Source of the DNA: Polymyxa betae A26-41
Taxonomy: Eukaryota; Protista; Endomyxa: Phytomyxea
Length of the DNA: 64,000 bases
Direction: 5' to 3'
Assembly: GCA_003693705.1 (NCBI GenBank)
Contig: RBZT01000500.1
Location: 103,725-167,724, forward strand
The position numbers and the translations under genes were made by a program. A model generated the notes under the pieces. That model was not told the DNA's origin. It searched no databases and was given only the letters and a program-made list of their open reading frames with translations. Below, piece after piece: positions 29,688 to 51,222 of the stretch (position 1 is the stretch's first letter; every line of letters begins with the position of its first letter).

Positions 29688-30419
29688 CTAGTCATCATCG
29701 TCATAATCTTCATCGTCGTGATCGTCTCTGTGATGATGCGTGGAATCCAGCTCACCATGACCCTGCGAGGGTGGTTAGGGTTTAGGACTTCGCAACCACT
29801 ATTTCCGCTTACGTCGTCATGATCGTGTTCGTCATGCGAATGGTGCTCGGCCTCATGATTTTCACTGTGAGCATGGCTCTCCGAGTTCTGATCGTTACCA
29901 GTCACTGCATTCATGAAATTTAACAACACGTGACAACACTTTGAAACAAAGAGAAACCCAATTTCTCGCAATGAACATGGTTAGACCCAATCAGGGCCAT
30001 ATGGATGGAAAGGATGTACCTTGGGCATTGATTTGGGCATTGGTAGTCACAATAACTTTATCCTTAGCAGTACCTTCTTTTTCGTGCCTTCCATCATCCT
30101 ATATATGGTTCAGTAATTAGAGTTAGTCGGGTTAAAGGGAGAGACACCGACCCGATGATATTCGTCGTCATGATCAGCTTCATGTGAATCATGATGATCC
30201 AGATTACTCGGGAAATGGTGATGGCCATGACCATGATGATGGTGATCGTGGTCGCCTTCCTCGTCATCATCGTCCTCTTCGTCCCCGTGATGTCCGAAAT
30301 GGCCTGAAACGATTGAATTGGCGTGAAGGGCGCTCTCAATGAATGGTACCGTAACTCCATGCAGAAGCGCCTAATATTAGAAGTGAAAATATTAAAGCGA
30401 TTGATGTCGTCCTATTCAT
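29688..30419 (-). CDS. Secreted His/Asp-rich protein HRP-1 (~155 aa, 5 exons)
   Basis: Exons 30419-30350, 30303-30152, 30098-30020, 29904-29813, 29762-29688 join in frame via GT-AG introns: MNRTTSIALIFSLLILGASA-WSYGHFGHHGDEEDDDDEEGDHDHHHHGHGHHH...KDKVIVTTNAQINAQVTGNDQNSESHAH...DYDDDD*. Confidence 0.85.
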
Positions 30420-30533
30420 GATACTGATACCGGGTCCTTTAGCCCGGACAAAGATCCAGTAAATTATAGGTTCGCCGTGCAATAAATTACAAAAATGGCG
30501 ATGAGAACAATCATGAACCGACCGATTCATAGT

Positions 30534-30554
30534 TGAGTCATATTGGATGAGTCC
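30534..30554. promoter_or_regulatory. TGAGTCA site plus TGAGTCC variant upstream of HRP-1
   Basis: TGAGTCA 30534-30540, 115 bp from ATG 30419. Confidence 0.6.
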
Positions 30555-31554
30555 TGCAACAACTGATTATATAGATTCAGAAAAAAATTCAGTGTAAAAA
30601 TATGAAACTATTTTCATTTCATTTTGCGGTTAGAAACATGACTAGATACGTTACTATCACATGAAATCGTTCACATGAAGTCCAAATCGCCACCACAACG
30701 CATATGACGCTTGTTGATTGTTAGAAAAATGAAAGCATTCGGTCTGCGATCAGCAGGGGCGATTATGGATTCGATTTCCGGATTGGAAATTATCGGCTGT
30801 CTACTGATCATACAAGCTCTATGAATACATCCTATGTGCATCATCAAGCACCGATCTCCAGTCGAATGGTGATAAGAGAGAAGGACGGAAACTGATTCAT
30901 ACTGGACAATAGTGAGTTAAGATCAGCCTTGAACTGACGCTGATATGAACATTTTCATAGGATTGCCAGAAAAAATGCGATAATTGCTGCGAACATTCCG
31001 GCAGATATTCGAATCCGCCATTGTCATATGAAGATGTGTTCGACGATGGATGGTGTGTAACGATCATTTTTACTTGTGCTATCAATAATGGTTTCAGGCA
31101 GCTCACCATTCTAATACTGACTGATGCAAGATTAAACTGGATTCGATCATTCTAGATCGCTGATCTTTCCAACAGGGGGCGCTGTGCTCTAAGCGCGGCA
31201 AGATTGGATTGGATTTCACTAGTTCGTAGATTTTTGGTCAACAGGCGGCGCTGTATCCGAAGCGCAAGGCTGATAGTACTCTGGAGCGCTGCAAGATGAA
31301 TGCCATCGGAGCAGCATGCAGCGGTATCCAGAGCTGAATCTGCAGTGGTTCAGGGCTGTGAACAGCCTCACGTCTTAGGATAAAGATATCAAACATCCAG
31401 AACATTCTGAATGTCGATAAATGAAGGAGGGAGGCGACATGATTTACTGCGTTTATAGAGAGAGGTGGCCGCGCTCCATCTCATTCTCATCTTGGAAGTG
31501 GTGCCCGCCTACTAGCTGCCTATCTGGCCTCATTCTGCAATCATTCCATTCACC

Positions 31555-33160
31555 ATGACGACGTCATCGGCAGAGCTATCTCAGGACCAATGCGATCTCA
31601 TCAGAAGCATCTGCATGTACTTGCAGCAAATCGGTAGGCTGAATACCAGGCTCTCGGTGTCGTGGCCTGATCCCATTCAGGCACGATCAAATCGATCGAC
31701 GCTGATGCCATCGAGGTCGCCATTCAATGCATTAGTACGTCAATGTCAATGTTACGACGAAGCAATAACCGATTCAGGTGATTCGACCGGTGTTGATATC
31801 AGCCAGCCATCAAGCAGATACCTTCCGCCATTAGACGAAATTTTCAGAACGTAACCGATTTCAATCTGGTAGTGAAACATTGATTAAGAGATGTTGGTTA
31901 GAGGCATGACGGTTATTAACTCTCAGAATGGGCATCCAGATGGATTTGAGAGGTTTTTAAAAGCACTCAAAGAGAAAGGATTCTTCGAGGGTCATGCTGA
32001 AGGTAGCCCTGAATATCAAGTCAGGCTGCAGCGCGCTCGTGAGAAATTCTTTGACCGATTTGGTCAAGCGGCTACACACGTCACCGCTGAGCAAGTCCAG
32101 CAGTCAGAGGTACTGAAAATGGAAGGTGAGACTGCTTTCGTCTTGCGGTCTGTCAAGTCGTTGAATTATTGTAGGAAACAGGCTGCTGTCGGGTGGCGAT
32201 ACGAACGGTGCCATTGAAGCATACACCAAAGCGATCACTTTGAACCCGACCAATGCGATTCTGTTTTCAAACCGGGCTGCAGCTTATCAGAAATTGGGAA
32301 ATAATGAACAGACGATCGCCGATTGGTAAATTGACAGCACAACGTTGCTGGCGCTTTCGTTGATCGAGATGGGACAGCCATAGGGCGATCGAGCTCGATT
32401 TCAATTATACAAAAGCGCATTATCGGTGCGGTGTCGCTCATACGAACCTGAATCAGAAAAGCAAAGCTAAAGATTGGTTCGTATTATTGCCTTTGCAATG
32501 CTGGATCAACTCACGCTTCGTATAGCTTTAATCAAGCGCTGGCTACATGCACCGACCAATCGTCGCCGCTTGCTTGCGAGATCCGCGATGCGCTGGCCGC
32601 ATTAGACGTATTTGCAAATCGTCATTGTGGATTGTTTGTTAAGACGAGATGTAGGCACCTTCAGTAAGGTCTTCCAGTTCGGGTGCCGCTCCATTTGACA
32701 TGAGCGCATTACTCAACAACCCGATGGTGCAGCAGATGATGCAAAACCCGGAGCTTATGACTGGCGTAAGCTCGCCCTACTCTTCGTTTTGATCGTTTTG
32801 TGAATATGCTGGCTAGATGTTAAGTAACATGATGGGCGGAATGGGCGGCTCTAACATGGGTGGAATGGGCGGCTCTAATCCATCATCGCCAAGCACCCCT
32901 AATCCAATGCAAATGCTGACTGATCCATCCTCTTTCCGAGATTTCATGAATTCGCCTGCAGTGAAAGGTTACGAACAGGTAAATGGTGAGCATTGAGGCT
33001 TCGCTTTGCTAAACAGGTCGTCCAGGACCCTCAGCTTGGTCCCGTAATTGCTGACCTTCGGGAAAATGGCGTTTCTGCCATCATGAAGCACATGTCAAAC
33101 CCGATGCTGATGGCGAAGCTATCTGCGTTAATGAAAGCCAACAATGAATCTTCTCAGTAA
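31555..33160 (+). CDS. SGTA: SGT/SGTA-like TPR co-chaperone, multi-exon
   Basis: N-terminal dimerisation motif (SICMYL..DAIEVAIQCI), TPRs (LKMEGN..AIEAYTKAI..ILFSNRAAAY..YTKAHYR), Met/Asn/Pro-rich STI1-like tail. Confidence 0.85.
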
Positions 33161-33573
33161 ACGTTCTGTTTATGTTCGGTCATAATTAATACAACGGTTA
33201 GAATTGACTGAACTCTGTGTAGCTGCAAGCGTAAATTTTGATTGTGGATTCCAATGGTTTTCTGAACATACACGGTCGGCTTCTGGCTGCAGCTCCTCGA
33301 CATCGTTAGTCTTTCACTTTTTACGCTTGTTCACTATGCGCGTGGTAAAATTGGTCTCTCGACAATACTGGCGAAAATTGCTGAACAATGAAACGCTTCG
33401 TCAGTATTTTGATTGGTTATTCATATGAGTGGCTCCAGAGCAATATTAGGATTCTACTTCATACTTTATTGTACAGTCTGGTGTTTCCAAAGCCGTCATC
33501 GACGACAAATCGAGACAGCTTCAATTTTTAAAGAATGTCGTATGTTATGCTGGAGCGCCAACAACGGTCACAT

Positions 33574-33605
33574 TGAGTCAACAGCATTAAGATCATCTTG
33601 ACTCA
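33574..33605. promoter_or_regulatory. Two TGA(C/G)TCA sites upstream of HRP-2
   Basis: TGAGTCA 33574-33580, TGACTCA 33599-33605; ATG at 33631. Confidence 0.55.
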
Positions 33606-33630
33606 GCCAAAACCTCGTCTACGTTGAACT

Positions 33631-34336
33631 ATGTCAATTCGCGTTCTTTACTTGACTGTCGCTCTTGGTATCCTACTTGGTCTGCCAAGCGCTGATGCCA
33701 AGCGCAGATTTCATCCAGACAGTGATGAAGATATGTTCTCAATGAAGGAACATACCGTAAGACCTGAATCGTAGTCACACTGAGCAAAGCATGACATAAT
33801 CCCAGCGACATGATGAAGACGATGATGATGATGATCATTTCGGTCATGGTATCGACCCAAAAGGCTGGGATGGTTGGGGAGAAGCTGATGACGTATGCTG
33901 AGCGATGCCTATTGGCATTCATCAACCATGTTGATAATGCTGTTTAGATGCTACATCAGCGACACCTGAAGCATCTCCATGACAGAGGTCATAACAAACA
34001 TCACGATGATGATGACGACGACGACCATCATAAAAACGATTGGGTAGTAGTAGCGTTTCTGAATTGAAACGATATGCTAAATAAGACGTTTTCAAGTTAC
34101 GTTGGGGAGAGGAAGATGAGCGTGATGATAAGGACCATAATCACCATCATGATCACGGCGAGGTTGGTTCTAAGTTGTGTTCCAACCGGTGATCTAAAAA
34201 AATGATACAGTTCGAAACACCGTTTGATGACGAACACGGTCATCACGGCGATCATCATCACGACAATAAACATCATCACGACGATAAACCTCATCACAAG
34301 CATGGGCATGGGCATGGGCACGGCCACCGCCATTAA
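33631..34336 (+). CDS. Secreted His/Asp-rich protein HRP-2 (~166 aa, 5 exons)
   Basis: Exons 33631-33756, 33806-33892, 33948-34043, 34097-34162, 34211-34336, all GT-AG phase 0: MSIRVLYLTVALGILLGLPSADA-KRRFHPD...FETPFDDEHGHHGDHHHDNKHHHDDKPHHKHGHGHGHGHRH*. Confidence 0.85.
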
Positions 34337-34445
34337 ATTCTCTGCCAGCTTGGCCATTAGTTTCGTCAGCTACATGCTAAATTAAACAAGGTTTTTTCAA
34401 TCAAAGAGAGAGATGTGTTTTACTTACATAAATACAAAGTTTTTT

Positions 34446-35438
34446 CTATCGTTTAAATTTTCTTTCCATCTTTAGCCTTTTCTTAGCAGGCTCTAAAATT
34501 TTCGCTAATCGACCATTGCTTTTGGTCATGGTCGGCGTCGCCGCAGTTGGCTTTGCCGCTTTCGTACCAGGCTGATCACGGGCCCGAATGATCGTCTTCC
34601 TGACGATATTAGCTTCTGGTTTTATCCTTTTCACTGAGGCCTGAAGCTTGGCGCTTTCTGCTTGCTTGTTTTTTTCAGCAAGACGGGCAGCGTATTCTTG
34701 CGCTTTTTTCTCGCGATCCTGGAGAACGTTTTTGTAGAACTCACGCCAGAAGCTTACGGGCATACTCTGCACTCGAATTGTGAATGATATTGAAGAAATG
34801 ACTAAGCAATTACATACATCAGCGTCTTCAATAGCGGCGTATTGTTCAGGCAGATCCAGCCTTGCTACCCTTCTCCAGCATATGTCCAGATCTTGGACCA
34901 GTTCGGGATTGAGTCTTTCAAGACGCATCAGATCGGTTGCTTTAGCGTTTTGAGCAATCTGTAACAAAATAGGCGTTGGAAGGACACAGTCAAGGCGCCC
35001 CAATCTGGAAATGTTGTGACGAAGAACGGTTAAGCAAAGTGACTGAAGTGAAGAAACGCGTCCTGTCGCTACCAATGGTTCGTTGAATGTTATTGATTCG
35101 CGCCTTTTCTGAGGAGTCTCTTCGGGTGCTACACAACATTGATATTAGCGCCTTATAATCGCTGTGAAGATAGTAATACGTTTTGCCACGACTGCTTTCC
35201 AAATCGTAATCAGCTTTTTAGCCCGATCTTTCAGGGCACGATTTTCAAGCTTATTCCTGGCTGAATTTACAATTTTCCCCGCCTTGGTCGTTCGCAGCAG
35301 CTCGGTCGTCATGGTGATTCGCTCCAGATCCAGCAATGCAGCCGCGATTTGGGTGCCGCATTGTTCCTGGTTAGTCTCCGGGCTGGTTAGGTCCCGAAGA
35401 CGCTGGCACGCGCTGGTGATTCGATCGATCAGCGACAT
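34446..35438 (-). CDS. ELOA: Elongin A-like protein (TFIIS N-terminal domain plus Elongin A domain), multi-exon
   Basis: MTTELLRTTKAGKIVN..AKKLITIWK (TFIIS-N); VSSLQSLCLTVL BC-box; LMRLERLNP..W..FWREFY. Confidence 0.8.
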
Positions 35439-36098
35439 GCTAAATGGCGAGTTCGAGTCAGGAGGGGCACTGGATCGCCGGGCTGCGTCTCCAGTCAGAT
35501 TACCACCAAGTGGACAATTTTCGCCTGTCGGTGACTGATCGGTCGATGGGGCTGCGCCTGGCCAGGAATTTCTTTCTCGAAAGTTCGAGTTGCTGGGGGG
35601 ATCTGGGGCGCCTATATCNNGGGGGGGGGGTTGGCGATGAGAGACGATGATCAGCACTTCGACCATTCGTCAAATCTATCGTCGACCGACACGTGTCAAG
35701 TCGTTCAACGATCGACACGTGCAGCGCGCTGATTGATTTCGTTTGATTTCACTCTCACTCCCGACCATCTTTCTGGGGTTTTGATCATACCTTAGTGAAG
35801 GTGACGCATTGCAATGCTATCTTAATGTGATTCTGCTTCGACACCGGATCTCTCTTTCTCAACTGGTTTTTACTCTTGTCTTCCCTTGAATTGTTATTTA
35901 TAAGCTTATAGCACGGTAGTCAGCGGTAAAGCTGACGTATCGAATAACAAAGGCAATGTTATCCTTGTTGGAGAGCTGCTGACAAAACTTCTACATAGCG
36001 ATTCAACGCTTTGTTCTCTATTCGGTGATCGTTCACCCGTTATTTGCTTTACACAGCTTTATCGCAGAGCGAGGATGGAGTCACCGAAATTCCGATTT

Positions 36099-36155
36099 TG
36101 ACTCATTTGGTTCTGCCGATGTCCTCCGACTATATGAGTCACGTGTTCTGAGTCA
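36099..36155. promoter_or_regulatory. Three TGA(C/G)TCA sites upstream of HRP-3
   Basis: 36099-36105, 36135-36141, 36149-36155; ATG at 36265. Confidence 0.7.
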
Positions 36156-36264
36156 ATTACGGTCGGTGCTGAATCGCTGATTCAGGCGAAATTCGTCATT
36201 CTTATATTTCCACTCGATCGAAAGGCATATTATCGTCAAGTTTTCATATCGACGCCTATAAACC

Positions 36265-36879
36265 ATGAAGATCTTACCTATCTTGACGTTGGTTTTGATC
36301 GTCGTCTCGCTGGTACAAGCTCAGCGGCATGACGCGTGGAATCGCGCCCAAGGAACCCGAGCGCAGATCGCCAACCATCACGATGAGCATGTAAACGCCA
36401 ATAACAAGGATAAAGGCGAAAACATCATGCAGCACAAGGGCAAAGATAACACCGATGTTGAAACGGCTGCTTCTTTGACTGCCACCGTGACGGCTACCGA
36501 TGAACACAGCGACCAATACTCGCACCACATGGACAATTCTCACGAGTTATCGCATGCTGACGAACAGCTGCGGTTGATCGAAGCAGCCAGTGCTCACCAG
36601 AACATGGAGCACGATGAAGACGAAGCCGCTGAACATTTCGATGATGACCATCACCACGGCCACCACGAGCCTCTGGATGGTACTCATGGAGGGCACCACG
36701 ACCACCATGATCATCACCAAGGCGGCCTCCACGAAGTTGATCACCACCCCGAAGAGTTCAACCGGTTCGAGTTCCACGAACCTCATGATGACCGCCACGG
36801 ACACGATGGTATGCATGGTCACGATGGTTTTCATGGCCACGACGGTATTCATGGTCACGATGATCATCACTTTCATTAA
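36265..36879 (+). CDS. Secreted His-rich protein HRP-3 (204 aa, intronless)
   Basis: Signal peptide MKILPILTLVLIVVSLVQA; central KDNTDVETAASLTATVTATDEHS motif; C-terminal HGHDG(M/F/I) repeats. Confidence 0.9.
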   Translation: MKILPILTLVLIVVSLVQAQRHDAWNRAQGTRAQIANHHDEHVNANNKDKGENIMQHKGKDNTDVETAASLTATVTATDEHSDQYSHHMDNSHELSHADEQLRLIEAASAHQNMEHDEDEAAEHFDDDHHHGHHEPLDGTHGGHHDHHDHHQGGLHEVDHHPEEFNRFEFHEPHDDRHGHDGMHGHDGFHGHDGIHGHDDHHFH

Positions 36880-38685
36880 ACTAAACGATCCTGCCCGAGG
36901 TTTTTCGGACACCGATTCCTTTTATGATAAACCGATCTAATTTCCTCTCATATCGTTCCATTTGTTTTGTCTTTGCAATTCCGCGTGAAATCACTGAAAT
37001 TCACTGAGACCGATTTAGTTTCATTAAGACATGCATGCGGCAGAAATTCAAAACGGCAGCTCAGCAATGAATTAGGCTAGGTGCACGAGAGCCCCATGAC
37101 CGATCTCTGCACTTTGCTAACCAAACAGTTTTTAACAGGACCCTTGGCATGATCGTACTCATATCGGAACCGTTATAGAACATTATGCTGTTGACCAGCG
37201 AGATTTGCATTTCAACTTTTCGAATGGGTTGGAAGCACTGGACAGCAAAAGAAGCCATATAATCTCCTAGCATTCCAGTCGAAAGGTTTGCCCTACGCCA
37301 AGTACACTGAAAGATTGGGCGTGTCGTCGAAGTAGCCATTCGAGGCCTGAAGAACCATTACGCCCTCAAGCGACAACATGAATGAGATCCACAAAGCCTC
37401 ATAGTGCTGTGTATCAAGAGGCCGCTCCCACCTATTCTGCTTCCAGTTTGACGATTGATTTCTCATTCGATTTGTGTGTTTGTGACCTATTAGGCCTCAT
37501 ACACGATCTTTGCGGAAATGACAAGCCATTGAGAATCTGTTGCCGGCATCGTGTTTATCTGCTTAAGCTGCTCACAGTTGGGGATTTTGTGTGCAGTGCG
37601 GTTACATGGATTACACAAGCATTGGGTCTTCTGATCAATGCCGTTTCGCACCTGCCAGCGTTGACTCGATGCAAAGTTGCAGGATCTCATCGTGTGCTGG
37701 CCATCTTGCAGTATCTGGTAAATGCCGTGAAGTTGCTTAGAAGTTTAAACCAATACCTTTAGTATTGCCAAAACGTTTTGATGGTTTTGAATTGTACAAT
37801 ATTCATTGCCGACTATTTATATGTTTATTTCTACCTAGTCAGGTTAATACATTGATCATCAGATTTTAAGACTAATGGCGTCTAATCTGTGATTCTGGTT
37901 TACAGAATCATTTTGAAATGCAATAGGCAGGCGGATAATCCCAGAATTTTTGAGAAAGAGCACTGTGCTGTCTATTCTATATCGCCTTCGCTGCTCAGTT
38001 GGATTGCTTTCCGGCTTGCCTGGGATCCAGAATGCTCGAGTTCACGACTTGTGAATGTAGCATTCTCTCTGGTCGATGCATAGCTTGCTACGATAAAGAG
38101 AAAATATCGAAAACCTAACAAGATGCTACATCATTAAAAGCTCTCTCTTTCAACTGATCAAACAGAAGCCCCAAAGCGATGTCAATTGTCAACCAAGCGA
38201 AGCGAAACGAACAATATGTTTTTTTGACAAAGTTGTTCATTTCAACAATCTCGTTTGGTGCTATCTTTTCTCAATTGACTAAACGATTCCAGATTTGGAT
38301 CATAAAAGCGCTAGTAATCTGATGCTATCGAAAGTGTATTCTGGCAACGCCGGCTGGCATGATTATTCGGGCAGGCGAGAATGCATTGCAGTCCGAGCTG
38401 TATTTGCTTCTAATTAAGATGCATATTATTGTGCTCGAAAGTCCCTGGTGGAAAACGCTTACTCAGAAACTCGCTACTTCTTCTCGATGTTGATTAACAG
38501 ATTGATTAGATAGACTGTAATTTGCAAGCAATATTACAGTCAATTTATCAGCGGATATACAATTATATTAAGAAGGTTAGAACACTCGCTGATGTGTTCA
38601 AGTTCTTAGCTATGCCTAAGAATCTTTGCAGAAGCGTGTTCAGTGGAAGCACAGACCCTGAACAGCTTCCAAAATTGACAAAGGG

Positions 38686-39387
38686 TCAGGCCGATTGGCT
38701 CTGGAGGATTGTCGGGCGAAACCTTTTCTGGCCGCTGAATGGGATATTGTGGTTATCCTCGGTTGGTTTGGTAAGAAGCGATGAGGGTGATTGCGACTTC
38801 ATCTCCGATTCCCTCCTTTGGGTTTTATGGACCTTAACGAATCCACCATGCATCACATTCTCATCGTCGGCTAAGTTCTTTGCAGTTTGTTTCATTTCCT
38901 CGACGGAGGCTTGAAGTTTGGCGTTTTCCTCTTCGAGTTCCTTGATCCTCTGTTCGAGTTCCTGAATGTGACGTCTCTGGGCTGAGCCCTTTTCATCGGT
39001 TTTACGAACGATCAGCGGCAGCATGTTTGGGTGACCTCTGATGAAGTATGGATGACGGAACTCAACCTGGGTCGCCGAGATTGTGGTCTTGGAGAACCCA
39101 TAGAAATGCATCTGACGAACGAAGCTGCTGAAGTTCGAAGTGTTGAAGTACAGGTGCAGCAGCTCGGACTCGAGCCGGTTTGAATCATAGACGATGAACT
39201 TATCTCCCTCGGGGTTCCAACCGATGATATCTTCTTGTCCTGATTCGACAAGCTTGTAGATTTTCTGCACGAAAGTTGGCGTTTCCATGACGAATTTGTA
39301 ATTCTGCAGCGCATCGGTTGCCATGGATGGACTTATCGGTGATGAAGGTGACCTTTCGGGTAATAGGCTTTCTGAGTGATAACCCAT
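38686..39387 (-). CDS. HSF-type transcription factor, paralogue A (intronless)
   Basis: FVQKIYKLVE..IIGWN..GDKFIV..YFNTSNFSSFVRQMHFYGFSK..EFRHPYFIRG; heptad coiled coil follows; start codon uncertain. Confidence 0.92.
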   Translation of the reverse strand: MGYHSESLLPERSPSSPISPSMATDALQNYKFVMETPTFVQKIYKLVESGQEDIIGWNPEGDKFIVYDSNRLESELLHLYFNTSNFSSFVRQMHFYGFSKTTISATQVEFRHPYFIRGHPNMLPLIVRKTDEKGSAQRRHIQELEQRIKELEEENAKLQASVEEMKQTAKNLADDENVMHGGFVKVHKTQRRESEMKSQSPSSLLTKPTEDNHNIPFSGQKRFRPTILQSQSA

Positions 39388-40058
39388 AGCTGCTGATGAC
39401 TTTGAACTCTTCAAATCTGGACCCGTTATTAAACGGAAAACGAACATGGAGTAAAAGGACCAAGCCAGTAAGGCGCGCCTCTCAGAGCCCGAATTAGGCG
39501 CGCAGAAGATGAGCAACAACGGTGACTAGCGCGGATCATCAATAGCTGATGAGCTTGACTAGGGCATGAGCCCATATAATGGCCGACTCATCCCTGCACT
39601 AAAGCATCGATCTCGACTGTCTTGGCTCATTTTCCACAGGATATGCTGCTATCAGTTGCTAAAAAGTATATTCAGTTTTAAATCATGGTATCAATTACAT
39701 AATCATCGACTCAGATAAGTCAGATAATTGCTGCATTCGTCTACGATGTCGAAAGGGGCAGATTTGCGTCGACTGGCGGCAGTTGTGATCATAATGTTCA
39801 GTCAATATTGTTAGAGTATTGGCCCCAACTTACGCGACGTATCGCATATGAAGCGGAACAAGGACCGCTTAGGGGGCAATGACATTCCTGCTCGCTAATT
39901 CATGACGGGGGTTCTCTGTCCCTTGAACCATTTTGCATTTATAACGTTCTACCCATTAGTTAAGACAACAGATGTGGAATTACATTGAAACTTTAGTAAA
40001 TAATTGCACGTAAACTCGACATTGATACACTGGTCCTAGACGTATCTCGCGATACCAA

Positions 40059-40664
40059 TCAGTTATATTCGTCCTTCTTCTTTCCGTATTCATCATACTT
40101 CTCCTCCTTGCACTCTGAGGTCTTGCACTCTTTAGGCTTACATTCGCTAGTCTTGTTGCATTTGTCATATTCTTTGCCGTAATCGTCCTTGGAGTACTCA
40201 TCGCCATACTTCTTATCTTTGGAGTACTCCTCGCCATACTTCTTGTCTTTGGAGTAATCGTCATACTTCTTGTCTTTGTACTCCTCGCCGTACTTCTTGT
40301 CTTTGGAGTAATCGTCATACTTCTTGTCTTTGTACTCCTCGTCATACTTCTTGTCTTTGTACTCCTCGCCATACTTCTTGTCTTTGTACTCATCGCCATA
40401 CTTCTTATCTTCGGAGTACTCACCGCCATACTTCTTGTCTTTGGAGTATTCTTCTCCGTAGTTTTCAGGATACGCCTTTTCTTCGTCTTTATAAGGCTGG
40501 CACTTGTACTATAGACAAATATTGAGACGATAGATTTGCAGAGAGCTCTGACTTACATCTTTCTCACAATCAGAGGGTGGTCCACAACAATCTTTTTTCT
40601 TGCCACCATGGGCAGCAACGAAGGCCACCAAGACAGCTGCGAGGATAAAGGATAGCTTCATCAT
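40059..40664 (-). CDS. Secreted Tyr/Lys/acidic tandem-repeat protein with Cys-rich ends (~185 aa, 2 exons)
   Basis: Exons 40664-40557 and 40508-40059 (48-nt gtaagt..tag intron): MMKLSFILAAVLVAFVAA-HGGKKKDCCGPPSDCEKDYKC..(Y[GD][ED]EY(S)KDKK)~10..KCNKTSECKPKECKTSEC..DEYN*. The ORF track shows the wrong frame. Confidence 0.9.
40180..40460 (-). repeat. Coding tandem repeat, 27-30 bp, about 10 copies
   Basis: TATGGCGAGGAGTAC(TCC)AAAGACAAGAAG units. Confidence 0.92.
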
Positions 40665-41328
40665 GCTCAGATAACGCTCTTGAAGTTGATGTTGAACGAA
40701 TCAAATCAAAACCAGAATGATGTTAAGCCTAAGGCGGTGACACGCTTTAAATACCTTTCTTAGTACAGAGGATCTCATTGAACCGAGCCACGTGGCCGAC
40801 CAGCGCACGTTACGTTCCACAAGGCAACCGCGTCTTTGACAATCTCTTCGACTGAAGAGCCAGTGGAGACGCGCCCACTGGCGTGCGCGTCAGCATTTGC
40901 CGCACTATGCGCGTGTCCATGCCCAACTGGGAAAGTGCAGAGAGATTTGGTACCTTCCACTCAGGAATCTGTTGGTCTGGAAGTTATCTCCAACTGGAAC
41001 ACTAGTGGCGTCGCCGCCGTCGCGACATGCTGCAGTGAGGCCAGGCCATCGATGACGAGATGCTGTTACGCAATACTACACTCGCCACCATCTTTTGATA
41101 TGCTATTGACTGTCTCTCATTCTTACTCATCCTCTCTCTAAGAAGCAGTTGCCAGTCATGCCAGCATTTATCAAGTCAAGCATTTGCAATCGTCAGCGAG
41201 AGATGCACTGGATAGCCACACAGTTCTGGGTGCTCGGAATGGTCCACTGAGCTGGAAATGGATTGCTCGGATCAAAGGCAAGCACATAGGTACGATTGAG
41301 AAATCCCCAGATTGTGTTCTTCCAAATA

Positions 41329-41335
41329 TGAGTCA
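41329..41335. promoter_or_regulatory. TGAGTCA site upstream of HRP-4, in the divergent spacer shared with the Tyr/Lys gene
   Basis: aatatgagtcaac, 150 bp before ATG 41485; TATAAAA near 41418. Confidence 0.55.
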
Positions 41336-41484
41336 ACGGCGAACCAGAACTGGTCGGATTTTCATGCCAGTTGCGTCACCATGTTAACCGATTTTAAATG
41401 ATGGTTTTCATTTCTTCTATAAAATAACAGGAGTTCAACACGACGATTATCCTATCAAAACGACGTCGATTACCGCTCCGACCG

Positions 41485-42444
41485 ATGTCTGGCACAGTAC
41501 CGCTTTTCTTGCTGGTGCTGTTGCTGCTGACATCGGGGGTGAACGTCGCCTCCGCCGAACGATTTATCTATCCGCCGTCACATAACAACGAAGCAGTAGC
41601 TGTGGACCCAATTCTGGTCGCACAGCCGTATGAGGTTGTCCCCCATGGACCTCTTAGTATGAGCGTCGCATATAATGTGCCTCCTCAACATCATCACCAT
41701 AACGAAGTATATGATGGTGTAGTTTATAGACCATCCGCACACGAGGGAGATTTGCCTCCTAATCAGCACCATCATGTTGTTTCTACTCGAGTCGATGAAT
41801 ATGGGCGACCGGTTCCACCTCCTACGGCTAAGCCGGTTGATCCCGATCCGCCTTCATATCTAGATCATCCACAGGCTCATGAAATGGAGACAAGACCAAG
41901 AGCGCATGCAGTTGACCATGCAGGTCAAGCAGCGACTGAGGAAACTGAACCAGTATATGACGATGAACCATTTCTACACAGAGCTTTAGACAAGAGTCAG
42001 GCTTCGACGGATGTTACTAATGCTCTCGATCATGACCTAGGTGAACTGAATGTCAAAGAATCTGGAGACGATTTAACAGTCCATGTCGGCAAGAACAAAG
42101 TTAAGACTGAAACTGTCGCCACGATTACAGCCACGATCACAGCCACCGACGAGCATGAAGATTCTTACATCAATATTCATCGTAATGCTCATGAAGCATC
42201 CGCTGGTCACGAACACGATCATCTCGATGGAAAGACAGTGTATCTTGATGGTGCTAAGCACGACGCTCTGGACCAGCAAGGTGGCGCCGAAGTCGTACCG
42301 GCTGAGACTCCGCCTCCAGATCTGAGCTTCTTGCAAGATGTCGAGGTGCTGAAGGTCCTGTTTCCATGGTTGGAGAAGCACTCAAATGGGCAAGAGCCGG
42401 AACAGTCGCCCCCAGAAACATTGGACCATGTAGCACTGGCGTAA
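41485..42444 (+). CDS. Secreted His/Pro/acidic protein HRP-4 (319 aa, intronless)
   Basis: Signal peptide MSGTVPLFLLVLLLLTSGVNVASA; PPxQHHHH repeats; GKNKVKTETVATITATITATDEHE motif. Confidence 0.88.
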   Translation: MSGTVPLFLLVLLLLTSGVNVASAERFIYPPSHNNEAVAVDPILVAQPYEVVPHGPLSMSVAYNVPPQHHHHNEVYDGVVYRPSAHEGDLPPNQHHHVVSTRVDEYGRPVPPPTAKPVDPDPPSYLDHPQAHEMETRPRAHAVDHAGQAATEETEPVYDDEPFLHRALDKSQASTDVTNALDHDLGELNVKESGDDLTVHVGKNKVKTETVATITATITATDEHEDSYINIHRNAHEASAGHEHDHLDGKTVYLDGAKHDALDQQGGAEVVPAETPPPDLSFLQDVEVLKVLFPWLEKHSNGQEPEQSPPETLDHVALA

Positions 42445-50308: not shown

Positions 50309-50415
50309 ACGTTTGGAATGACAATATTGTTTCGCTAGCTCGTTGTTCATCATATTTCTATTAGTCGCAGAACTTCAATATCCCTCGATCTAATATTTGT
50401 AACTACCACAACCTA

Positions 50416-51054
50416 ATGAAAACGTTCCTAGTTGCCGCCTTAGCATTGGTCGGTGTGACCCAGGGCGACCGCCGTATGAACGGTTTCGACGATCATCATG
50501 GCGACCATCTCGTCCATGAATCCCGAATAGACCCGATCGACGTCGGGCATCACCGAACCGTTCCTGATTATATGGGACACGAAGACCGTTTCGATGGGCA
50601 CCGAACAAGCGAGCACCATGACCCAATCCATGACAAGATCCTGCCGCAGGACGTTCTTGAGCACCCTCTTGGAGGCGCTAAGTACGAGGGCGTCCACAAA
50701 GCCGTTAAAGAAGACAAGGGTGTCTGGCATGATGGCCACGATGGATGGCACGGCGATCATGGACATGGCGATCACGGCTACCACGGCGATCACGGCTACC
50801 ATGGCGATCACGGTGACCATGGCGATTACGAACATGGTGATCACGATGGATGGCATGGACATGGCTATGAGCACGGCCATAATGATCATGGTCATGATGG
50901 TTATGAACACGGACACGACCTGCACGCCAATGATTTCTTTGATGGAGTTCATGGATTCCACGGTCATGGCCGGCATGGCGACGACCACCACGAGGACGGC
51001 GTTCGAAAGTCGCTCGAGCACGATGATATCCCTCGCTATCATGGATATCACTAA
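50416..51054 (+). CDS. Secreted His/Gly/Asp-rich protein HRP-5 (212 aa, intronless)
   Basis: Signal peptide MKTFLVAALALVGVTQG; HGDHGY/HGDHGH/HDGWHG/GYEHGH repeats. Confidence 0.9.
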   Translation: MKTFLVAALALVGVTQGDRRMNGFDDHHGDHLVHESRIDPIDVGHHRTVPDYMGHEDRFDGHRTSEHHDPIHDKILPQDVLEHPLGGAKYEGVHKAVKEDKGVWHDGHDGWHGDHGHGDHGYHGDHGYHGDHGDHGDYEHGDHDGWHGHGYEHGHNDHGHDGYEHGHDLHANDFFDGVHGFHGHGRHGDDHHEDGVRKSLEHDDIPRYHGYH

Positions 51055-51222
51055 AGCGCTACGCGCAACTAACTATCATAAAATCTAACGTAATCAGTTT
51101 CAAGAACAAAATGATCAATAGGTAGTGCTTAGGAGTTTAAATAAACTGAAGTTCAACAAAGGACATCGCAGTCAATCGTAGCATTTTCTTGGTAGATCGT
51201 TGAGAAATCGCACAGAAGTCAA

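What the first reader, a model, noticed from the sequence alone, without database searches (positions are those of the whole stretch)
29870..42180. Unrecognised ~30-aa domain shared by three otherwise dissimilar His-rich proteins
Seen: HRP-1 AKDKVIVTTNAQINAQVTGNDQNSESHAH (split by intron 3, ~30070-29870), HRP-3 GKDNTDVETAASLTATVTATDEHSDQYSH (~36440-36530) and HRP-4 GKNKVKTETVATITATITATDEHEDSYIN (~42088-42180) align without gaps. The consensus is K[DN]xxx[VT]xTxAx[IL]xAx[VI]TxxD[EQ]. It alternates small or hydrophobic residues with Thr and is the only non-repetitive island shared among His/acidic disordered flanks. The motif reappears across a splice junction, which independently supports the HRP-1 model. 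Inference: a beta-strand polymerisation (amyloid-like) core that lets the paralogues co-assemble while the His arms bind metal or cross-link. I do not recognise it as a known family.
Basis: partly seen in the sequence, partly recalled or inferred. Interest (0 to 1): 0.82.

Follow-up and report, generated by a model that had tools for sequence, protein, structure and literature searches.

The report
Conserved beta-strand module in plasmodiophorid His-rich proteins
The shared segment is real: it is a roughly 45-residue module under strong protein-level selection that marks an undescribed family of secreted, histidine-rich, disordered proteins found only in plasmodiophorid root parasites (here almost certainly Polymyxa betae), but what it does is still inferred rather than shown.

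Summary
Observation confirmed and extended. HRP-3 and HRP-4 share one significant island (BLASTP 24/51 identical, E 2e-4; Smith-Waterman 138 against 54±8.6, 0 of 2000 shuffles).

HRP-1 is not significantly similar to HRP-3 or HRP-4 pairwise. It joins the family through two HRP-1-like paralogues. An RNA contig confirms the intron that splits its motif.

The genome matches the Polymyxa betae draft (1,001 contigs, 27.09 Mb). It holds at least 9 genes with the module. All complete models have a signal peptide, and the intronless ones checked are Cys-free, acidic and 9-22% His.

An exhaustive profile search of 1.84 billion proteins found 16 hits. The named eukaryotic ones are Spongospora subterranea and Plasmodiophora brassicae. 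There is no Pfam or PDB match.

In HRP-4 orthologues the 36-residue core is 94-100% identical across three genera, while the rest is 37-56% identical. Between P. betae and P. brassicae 34/36 residues match but only 13/36 third codon positions do, so selection acts on the protein.

Conservation has period 2 over 21 columns: one face T-A-L-A-V-A-D-H-D-Y, the other mostly Thr. AlphaFold2 gives pLDDT about 80 there without helix or internal sheet. This fits an extended strand that needs a partner, followed by a fixed Asp/His/Tyr/His ligand cluster.

The amyloid-like co-assembly idea is plausible but untested.

The scan had noted the same motif on another contig of this genome (s1-673912).

The parts
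36265..36879 (+). HRP-3 gene: intronless ORF of 204 aa with a signal peptide. The mature part is 22% His, has no Cys and a pI of about 5.5.
   Evidence: Orthologues: P0001 (93% identical, soil metagenome) and P0002 (68% identical, a UniParc id of the same accession range as the named S. subterranea hit).
36388..36567 (+). HRP-3 module: 60 aa as aligned in A3, with the core (G-K-D-N ... S-H) at 36439-36525.
   Evidence: 82-98 bits against the family profiles.
41485..42444 (+). HRP-4 gene: intronless ORF of 319 aa with a signal peptide. 8.8% His, no Cys.
   Evidence: Orthologues P0004, P0007 (S. subterranea A0A0H5RE08), P0009 (P. brassicae) and P0016.
42037..42216 (+). HRP-4 module: 60 aa, core 42088-42174. 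The 36-residue stretch at residues 194-229 is 94-100% identical in three genera.
29688..30419 (-). HRP-1 coding region in five exons: 30419-30350, 30303-30152, 30098-30020, 29904-29813, 29762-29688. All introns are GT..AG.
   Evidence: RNA contig of run X1 spans all four joints. Frames and splice sites were checked exon by exon.
30020..30074 (-). HRP-1 module, first half, at the end of exon 3. It ends in ..I-N-A-Q plus the first base of the split Val codon.
29870..29904 (-). HRP-1 module, second half, at the start of exon 4 (T-G-N-D-Q-N-S-E-S-H-A-H). The near-invariant His of the family is Asn here.
29905..30019 (-). HRP-1 intron 3 (115 nt), which splits the module.
   Evidence: joint 29904/30020, CT..AC on the + strand. 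Paralogue L021 has an intron at the same spot and L006 has none.

Best explanation
The segment is the defining module of an undescribed family of secreted, Cys-free, acidic, His/Asp-rich, intrinsically disordered proteins. The family is restricted to Plasmodiophorida as far as named sequences go.

Anatomy of the module (shown):
- a basic G-K-[DN]-K start;
- then about 13-21 residues in which every second position is conserved (T, A, L/I, A, V/M/I, A, D, H, D, Y) and the alternate positions are mostly Thr;
- then, in the intronless members, S-H-x-H-D-N-A-H-E.

Mechanism (inferred): the alternating part is an extended beta-strand with one small/large apolar face. It cannot bury that face within its own disordered chain. 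It therefore pairs with a partner strand, either of the same or a paralogous protein or of one common partner. The adjoining Asp/His/Tyr/His/Glu residues form a fixed divalent-metal site. The variable His-rich tails add low-specificity metal binding. The module would thus dock differently tailed paralogues into one assembly or onto one surface of the parasite or its interface with the host.

I hold the family and the protein-level selection at about 0.95 and the beta-strand at about 0.7. The docking/assembly role with a metal site I hold at about 0.4.
For: Real and not compositional.

Family of at least 9 genes in this genome, six of them on the window's contig. Signal peptides were seen on every member whose start I read: the five intronless ones, HRP-1, L013 and L021. 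No Cys, 9-22% His and pI 4.9-5.6 in the five intronless P. betae members.

Other genera: the profile search of 1.84e9 proteins gave 16 hits. The named ones are S. subterranea and P. brassicae.

Purifying selection on the protein: 34/36 residues are identical between P. betae and P. brassicae. Only 13/36 third codon positions are identical, and 21 identical residues use different codons. The core is 94-100% identical in P0004, P0007 and P0009, against 37-56% for the rest.

Period-2 conservation: entropy 0.70 against 1.87, p 5e-4. Invariant G18, T26, A28, D38; near-invariant A32, H40, D42.

AlphaFold2 on the 20-row alignment: pLDDT 79-82 over residues 21-40, with no helix and no internal sheet.

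Expression: spliced HRP-1 RNA in a root metatranscriptome.

Secretome listing of one subgroup as 'Seq cluster 167', with PBTT_08748 flagged disordered at pLDDT 44.6: PMC12503489 supplements.
Against: No oligomer, fibril or metal binding was tested.

Full-length HRP-4 with a 5-row alignment gives pLDDT below 50 at the motif, and a low-confidence helix over S-Y-I-N-I-H-R-N-A-H-E.

The Kyte-Doolittle beta-moment of the strand is not exceptional among windows of the same proteins (rank 8-138), although it exceeds the helical moment in 12 of 13.

Two S. subterranea ids thought to belong to the family (A0A0H5RE08 = P0007; A0A0H5RWI1, co-listed with PBTT_08748 in 'Seq cluster 167') are absent from the stored supplements of a sporosori proteome and of an in-planta proteome. 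This is a weak negative: the files are partly cut, and these proteins probably give few tryptic peptides.

A strand that docks onto a host protein would give the same conservation pattern.
Confidence: 0.45

Rival explanations
1. Effector-type linear motif. The module is a binding site for a conserved host target, or for an uptake or trafficking machinery. The His-rich tails act inside or at the host cell. The logic is that of RxLR in oomycetes or the C-terminal RSIDELD motif of the His/Ala-rich DELD effectors of Serendipita (Piriformospora) indica.
For: The proteins are secreted by an obligate intracellular root parasite and are Cys-free. HRP-1 RNA is present in root metatranscriptomes. A very highly conserved core inside disordered proteins is typical of interaction motifs. 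DELD proteins are a precedent for His-rich secreted proteins with a short conserved motif in a root coloniser (PMC3192844).
Against: No RxLR or DELD motif is present. The three hosts (beet, potato, brassicas) are distant, although a conserved plant target is possible. At 21 or more residues with period-2 conservation, the module is longer than usual linear motifs. Schwelm et al. found no over-represented host-targeting motif in plasmodiophorid secretomes (PMC4471660).
Confidence: 0.2
2. Metal site only. The module is a defined high-affinity Zn/Cu/Ni site (D38, H40, D42, Y44, H48, H52, E53) in zincophore-like or metal-buffering secreted proteins. The Thr/Ala strand is merely the scaffold that folds back on metal binding. 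There is no intermolecular assembly.
For: The ligand-type residues are the most conserved after the strand. The i/i+4 pair of His before Glu fits the helix that AlphaFold2 predicts there. The tails are 9-22% His in the five P. betae members measured. Plasmodiophorids depend on the host for nutrients (PMC4471660).
Against: The invariant positions T26 and A28, and the near-invariant A32, are not metal ligands. The apolar face A-L-A-V-A is as conserved as the ligands. HRP-1 has Asn at the near-invariant His.
Confidence: 0.2
3. Relic of an Ig-like or cadherin-like domain. The module corresponds to the last two strands (an F-G hairpin) of a bacterial-type Ig fold, and the rest has decayed.
For: The profile also hit two bacterial or metagenomic repeat proteins at repeated ..A-T-I-I-A-T-D-S-H-D-N-S-Y-S.. 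strands. P0012 has 6 stretches (E 5e-11) and P0015 has 4 stretches (E 5e-5). P0015 carries Big_9, Cadherin_5 and He_PIG matches.
Against: Only 19-26 profile positions match. No family member matches any Ig or cadherin Pfam model. The upstream sequence is not beta-rich, and AlphaFold2 folds nothing there. The similarity is what any Thr/Ala strand ending in Asp would give.
Confidence: 0.05
4. Chance or compositional similarity among low-complexity proteins.
For: HRP-1 exon pieces against HRP-3 or HRP-4 are within the shuffle range.
Against: 0 of 2000 shuffles reach the HRP-3/HRP-4 score, including local-composition shuffles. Orthologues in other genera score E 1e-13 to 1e-19 against 1.84e9 proteins. 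The core is conserved despite saturated synonymous sites.
Confidence: 0.02

Closest known systems
DELD family of Serendipita (Piriformospora) indica (His/Ala-rich small secreted proteins with a C-terminal RSIDELD motif; PMC3192844)
   Same: A lineage-specific expanded family of secreted His-rich proteins of a root-colonising microbe. A short, highly conserved motif is functionally separable from the His-rich part. No known domain.
   Different: No sequence relation, and no DELD motif. DELD proteins are 101-135 aa and are predicted as a two-helix bundle with regular His/Ala spacing. Here the module is internal and strand-like, the tails are His/Asp/Gly-rich and irregular, and the family spans three genera rather than one species.
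Plasmodium falciparum HRPII and similar parasite His-rich proteins
   Same: Secreted by an intracellular parasite, very His-rich, disordered, and binding metal or haem (as reviewed in PMC3192844).
   Different: HRPII consists of tandem AHH-type repeats without a unique conserved module. The AHH count here is 0-3.
Functional amyloids and beta-aggregation cores rich in Ile/Val/Thr (for example fungal Als adhesin cores, curli) and His-bearing alternating strands that bind Zn when stacked (from my own knowledge, not tested here)
   Same: An alternating apolar/Thr strand flanked by disordered sequence. An alternating D-x-H-x-D continues in the same register.
   Different: No evidence of fibrils. 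There is a single strand per protein rather than repeated units, and no homology.
Structural His-rich proteins hardened by metals (Nereis jaw Nvjp-1, squid suckerins with Ala/Thr/His beta-modules; from my own knowledge)
   Same: Secreted, Gly/His/Asp-rich tails, with a short Ala/Thr-rich beta-forming module.
   Different: No sequences were compared here. The organisms are unrelated, and no material role is known in plasmodiophorids.
Bacterial Ig-like / cadherin-like repeats (Big_9, Cadherin_5, He_PIG)
   Same: A local strand motif ..T-A-T-D-x-H-x-x-S-Y...
   Different: No family member reaches any of these Pfam models, and there is no full domain.

Membership tests
Any Pfam-A family | Score at or above the family's gathering threshold | tested here: not met
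   HRP-3, HRP-4 and nine relatives have no family near threshold. The best matches are Collagen at 13.4 bits against a cut-off of 27.2 and TDA11 at 14 against 27.
Any protein of known structure (by sequence) | Profile match to a PDB chain | tested here: not met
   Profile A3 against 177,635 PDB sequences: the only hit is 7mp7_A at E 1.3.
DELD effectors (S. indica) | C-terminal RSIDELD motif | tested here: not met
   No DELD string in 13 family members.
DELD effectors (S. indica) | 101-135 aa, regular His/Ala spacing, predicted two-helix bundle | tested here: not met
   Lengths are 193-488 aa. The models are mostly disordered, and the module has no helix.
HRPII-type tandem-repeat His-rich proteins | Tandem AHH-containing repeats make up most of the protein | tested here: not met
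   0-3 AHH per protein.
Oomycete-type RxLR effectors | RxLR within about 60 residues after the signal peptide | tested here: not met
   Absent in all 13.
Ig-like / cadherin-like domains | Full roughly 90-aa beta-sandwich matching Big, Cadherin or He_PIG models | tested here: not met
   There is no Pfam hit in family members. Only a partial strand similarity to P0012 and P0015 exists.
Functional amyloid | Cross-beta fibrils (ThT/Congo red binding, 4.7 Angstrom reflection, EM fibrils) | not testable with these tools
   Only indirect evidence: period-2 conservation and an extended AlphaFold2 model.
Metal-binding protein | Saturable binding of Zn/Cu/Ni at defined ligands | not testable with these tools
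   Conserved D38, H40, D42, Y44, H52 and E53 are the candidate ligands.
The new family itself (plasmodiophorid module-bearing HRPs) | Signal peptide plus a match to profile A3 with invariant G18, T26, A28, D38 | tested here: met
   HRP-3 scores 82-98 bits and HRP-4 scores 91-94 bits. HRP-1 meets this only partly: exon 3 scores 11-15 bits, Ala replaces the invariant Gly, and Asn replaces the near-invariant His. HRP-1 is linked to the family through L006 and L021.

The most novel reading that the evidence does not exclude
The module is a cross-beta assembly strand. When copies stack in register, the Ala/Leu/Val face zips, the Thr face forms a ladder, and the D-x-H-x-D-x-Y continuation lines up into a metal-binding row. 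Differently tailed paralogues would then co-polymerise into a metal-cross-linked protein material specific to plasmodiophorids. That material could be a component of the cyst or resting-spore wall, or of the Stachel, the hardened projectile that punctures the host wall; I found no account of its molecular composition.
Probability: 0.12. Interest if true: 0.8.

Novelty: new variant of a known kind. Interest (0 to 1): 0.5.

Why it matters
Plasmodiophorids cause clubroot and powdery scab and vector rhizomania. They cannot be cultured, and their secretomes are largely orphan. The P. brassicae genome paper reported no over-represented motif among secreted proteins (PMC4471660).

This module is a sequence signature shared by a multi-gene secreted family across three genera. 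Its core is held almost invariant while the rest of the protein drifts. That gives a concrete handle for localisation, interaction and metal-binding experiments: a 45-residue peptide, a profile, and defined residues to mutate. It also gives a marker for finding further phytomyxid sequences in metagenomes.

If the assembly reading is right, it would be a new type of protein material or metal-handling system in Rhizaria. If the effector reading is right, it points to a host target conserved across beet, potato and brassicas.

Tried and rejected
1. My first guess was a diatom, from the short introns, HSF paralogues and the 27 Mb size. I rejected it. The named relatives are plasmodiophorids, and the assembly statistics match the P. 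betae draft.

2. Pairwise HRP-1 against HRP-3 or HRP-4 is not significant. The claim was replaced by transitive evidence.

3. A word-index protein search with HRP-3 gave only 2 hits. The exhaustive profile search was needed.

4. Exact look-ups of this genome's own paralogues found nothing in the collection.

5. Raw-read RNA runs X21, X22 and X24 laid no reads, so they are no test. Only Logan contigs of X1 were informative.

6. The AlphaFold2 model of full-length HRP-4 is disordered, pLDDT 47. I therefore ran no fold search.

7. ESM Atlas look-alikes gave only sub-threshold scores (0.84 or less) to arthropod orphan proteins, caseins and enamelin. These are a generic secreted-disordered signal.

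8. The hydrophobic-moment analysis was not discriminating.

9. Supplement searches for two S. subterranea ids in two proteome papers found nothing. Full-text searches for accession numbers and for 'histidine-rich' with Plasmodiophora found nothing relevant.

10. DNA for P0004 could not be fetched.

11. All HRP-1 work was exon by exon, by reference.

Full report
**What is in the sequence**

The window is eukaryotic, with short GT-AG introns. It is G000:C479:103725-167724 of an assembly of 27,085,814 bases in 1001 contigs. The Polymyxa betae draft genome is described as 1,001 contigs and 27,085,946 bp, with 45.1% GC (PMC6328671). Every named relative of the proteins studied here comes from Spongospora subterranea or Plasmodiophora brassicae. 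RNA holding the locus comes from 'root metagenome' metatranscriptomes. I therefore take the organism to be P. betae. It is a plasmodiophorid (Rhizaria), an obligate root endoparasite of beet and the vector of rhizomania.

**The three segments**

- HRP-3 (36265-36879, +, 204 aa) and HRP-4 (41485-42444, +, 319 aa) are intronless ORFs with N-terminal signal peptides.
- HRP-1 lies on the minus strand in five exons.

**The HRP-1 model**

One 583-nt contig of a root metatranscriptome (run X1, depth 10) skips four stretches of 50, 115, 53 and 46 nt. All have CT..AC on the plus strand, which is GT..AG on the coding strand. With the GT-AG rule the coding exons are 30419-30350, 30303-30152, 30098-30020, 29904-29813 and 29762-29688. 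The phases close exon by exon.

Every HRP-1 comparison below is by single exon and by reference.

**Is the similarity more than chance?**

- HRP-3 against HRP-4 gives one BLASTP HSP: 24/51 identical, E 2e-4 with composition adjustment. Nothing else is below E 7.
- The Smith-Waterman score is 138. Whole-sequence shuffles give 54±8.6 and shuffles within 30-residue blocks give 58±8.2. None of 2000 shuffles reaches the observed score in either test.
- HRP-1 is different. Neither exon piece is significantly similar to HRP-3 or HRP-4.
- HRP-1 exon 3 is nevertheless the best non-member hit of a family profile in the six-frame translation of the window: 15.1 bits, E 0.003, next best 5 bits. After I removed the HRP-1-like row the hit drops to 11.3 bits, E 0.055.
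- HRP-1 is clearly similar to two paralogues elsewhere in the genome. Against L006 (C598:10.2 kb) exon 3 gives z 8.6. Against L021 (C479:1.6 kb) exon 3 gives z 10.9 and exon 4 gives z 7.3.
- L006 matches the family profile at E 1.7e-12; L021 matches it only weakly, at E 0.008. L006 carries the module uninterrupted. L021 has an intron at the same spot as HRP-1.
- HRP-1 is thus a divergent member. It has Ala at the otherwise invariant Gly and Asn at the near-invariant His.

**A family, not three genes**

Six-frame searches of the whole assembly find the module in the following genes:

| Gene | Place |
|---|---|
| HRP-3 | window, contig C479 |
| HRP-4 | window, contig C479 |
| L005 | C479:12.5 kb (tandem pair with L003) |
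| L003 | C479:13.6 kb (tandem pair with L005) |
| L004 | C920:7.9 kb |
| L006 | C598:10.2 kb |
| L013 | C598:34.4 kb |
| L021 | C479:1.6 kb (weak profile hit) |

- With HRP-1 that makes at least nine genes, six of them on the window's contig.
- Every member whose start I could read begins with a hydrophobic signal peptide.
- The five intronless ones have no Cys after the signal peptide. They are 9-22% His and have a pI of 4.9-5.6.
- HRP-2 and HRP-5 in the window are also secreted and His-rich but lack the module.
That fits the C598 pair.

**Relatives elsewhere**

- The word-index search with HRP-3 gave only two proteins.
- The exhaustive profile search of 1.84 billion representatives gave 16 hits at E up to 1e-3, ten of them at or below 1e-10.
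- The named ones are S. subterranea (P0007 = A0A0H5RE08) and P. brassicae (P0009, P0010 = PBTT_08748). P0002 and P0006 carry UniParc ids in the same accession range as P0007. P0008 is a fused gene model.
- The remaining eukaryote-like hits are unnamed metagenome or Logan proteins.
- Two hits (P0012, P0015) are bacterial or metagenomic Ig/cadherin-like repeat proteins. They match only 19-26 profile positions, at a repeated strand. I read this as convergence of a Thr/Ala strand ending in Asp.
- There is no Pfam family and no PDB sequence match.
- The only trace I found in the literature is a supplementary table of the 2025 eLife secretome study. It lists 'Seq cluster 167' (PBTT_08748, A0A0H5RWI1 and two P. 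betae models), with PBTT_08748 flagged disordered at pLDDT 44.6, and does not discuss it.
- The P. brassicae genome paper states that plasmodiophorid secretomes contain no over-represented motif.

**Anatomy and selection**

- In the 20-row alignment A3, positions G18, T26, A28 and D38 are invariant. A32, H40 and D42 are nearly so.
- From column 24 to column 44 conservation alternates. Even columns read T, T, A, L/I, A, V/M/I, A, D, H, D, Y with mean entropy 0.70. Odd columns are mostly Thr or other polar residues with mean entropy 1.87 (Mann-Whitney p 5e-4).
- After that comes S-H-x-H-D-N-A-H-E in the intronless members.
- In the HRP-4 orthologue group the 36-residue core is 100%, 97% and 94% identical to P0004, P0007 and P0009. 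The rest of the protein is 56%, 40% and 37% identical.
- Between P. betae and P. brassicae 34/36 residues are identical, yet only 13/36 third codon positions agree, and 21 identical residues use different codons. Selection is therefore on the peptide. It is not on a nucleic-acid element, and the similarity is not due to recent gene conversion.

**Structure**

AlphaFold2 on A3 gives pLDDT 79-82 over residues 21-40. The only DSSP element is a four-residue helix upstream at residues 13-16, and there is no internal sheet. Full-length HRP-4 is predicted disordered (pLDDT 47), with low-confidence helices at 227-240 and 281-299.

I also weigh the period-2 pattern and the abundance of beta-branched residues. 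My reading is an extended strand that needs an external partner, possibly followed by a short helix that places two His four residues apart next to a Glu. The Kyte-Doolittle beta-moment did not single the strand out, so this rests on conservation, not on hydrophobicity.

**How it most likely works**

Shown:
- a secreted, disordered, His-rich family;
- a module under strong purifying selection;
- period-2 conservation;
- expression of HRP-1 in roots.

Inferred:
- The strand pairs with another strand, either of itself and its paralogues or of one common partner.
- The adjacent Asp/His/Tyr/His/Glu residues form a fixed metal site.
- The tails add bulk metal binding.
- The module therefore brings differently tailed paralogues to one place.

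Three observations are consistent with a matrix or material role but do not prove one. The proteins lack Cys. Neighbouring genes encode other secreted low-complexity proteins: a KDKKYGEEY-repeat protein, HRP-2 and HRP-5. Similar His-rich gene clusters lie around the P. brassicae orthologue.

The main rivals are a host-directed interaction motif (the DELD-like logic) and a pure metal site. I cannot separate them with the tools at hand.

**Comparison with what is known**

The family works most like the lineage-specific secreted His-rich proteins of other host-associated microbes (DELD, HRPII). It is a member of neither, since the defining features tested are not met. The strand-plus-ligand module itself has no described counterpart that I could find.

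**Verdict**

This is a new, taxonomically narrow family module of unknown but testable function.

Noticed in passing
L003:1333-2151, and proteins P0005, P0010, P0013: The L003-type subgroup shares a second conserved motif at the extreme C-terminus: [DM]-[ILM]-P-W-[VI]-[AV]-[AG]-G-x-x-H as the last 10-11 residues. It is conserved from P. betae to P. brassicae. L004 and L005 as read here lack it, possibly because of unmodelled introns.
   Followed up: partly
window 41485-42444 and alignment A4: HRP-4 orthologues share three further islands besides the module: V-D-E-Y-G-R-P..P-P; D-D-E-P-F-L-H-x-A-L-D; and a C-terminal P-D-L-S-F-L-Q-D-V-E-V-L-K-V-L-F-P-W that is predicted helical.
   Followed up: partly
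L024 holds four to five His-rich secreted ORFs within 11 kb.
   Followed up: partly
P0008 (SPQ98797.1) and P0009 (XXQ36013.1), P. brassicae: The older gene model fuses a TTC38-like protein to the HRP-4 orthologue. The newer 276-aa model is the HRP-4 orthologue alone but still carries the name 'Tetratricopeptide repeat protein 38', and it has no Pfam match at all. The name is probably inherited and misleading.
   Followed up: partly
window 33646-34363 (+), HRP-2: A second RNA contig (513 nt, depth 5.8) confirms three HRP-2 introns of 55, 53 and 48 nt with GT..AG at 33893-33947, 34043-34095 and 34161-34208.
   Followed up: partly
window 40059-40664 (-): A secreted protein made of K-D-K-K-Y-G-E-E-Y-type repeats, flanked by Cys-bearing ends, sits between HRP-3 and HRP-4. 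It is another low-complexity secreted protein in the cluster.
   Followed up: no
window 50400-51100 (+), HRP-5: A secreted His/Gly/Asp/Tyr-rich protein with H-G-D-H-G-Y repeats and no module.
   Followed up: no
P0012, P0015 (bacterial or metagenome repeat proteins): Repeated Ig/cadherin-like domains whose strand ..A-T-I-I-A-T-D-S-H-D-N-S-Y-S.. mimics the module closely enough to pass E 1e-4 in a 1.84e9-protein search. Anyone using this profile on metagenomes should expect this false-positive class.
   Followed up: yes
Whole family: Plasmodiophorids are reported to lack His and Thr biosynthesis (PMC4471660). Yet this family is built largely of His, with a Thr-rich core, so its synthesis depends on host-derived amino acids.
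   Followed up: no
L021:1501-1724, L006:1513-1599 (-), window 29905-30019: Intron presence at the same codon of the module differs among close paralogues: present in HRP-1 and L021, absent in L006. In L021 the donor is shifted by one base. This is a small case of intron gain, loss or sliding inside a conserved motif.
   Followed up: partly
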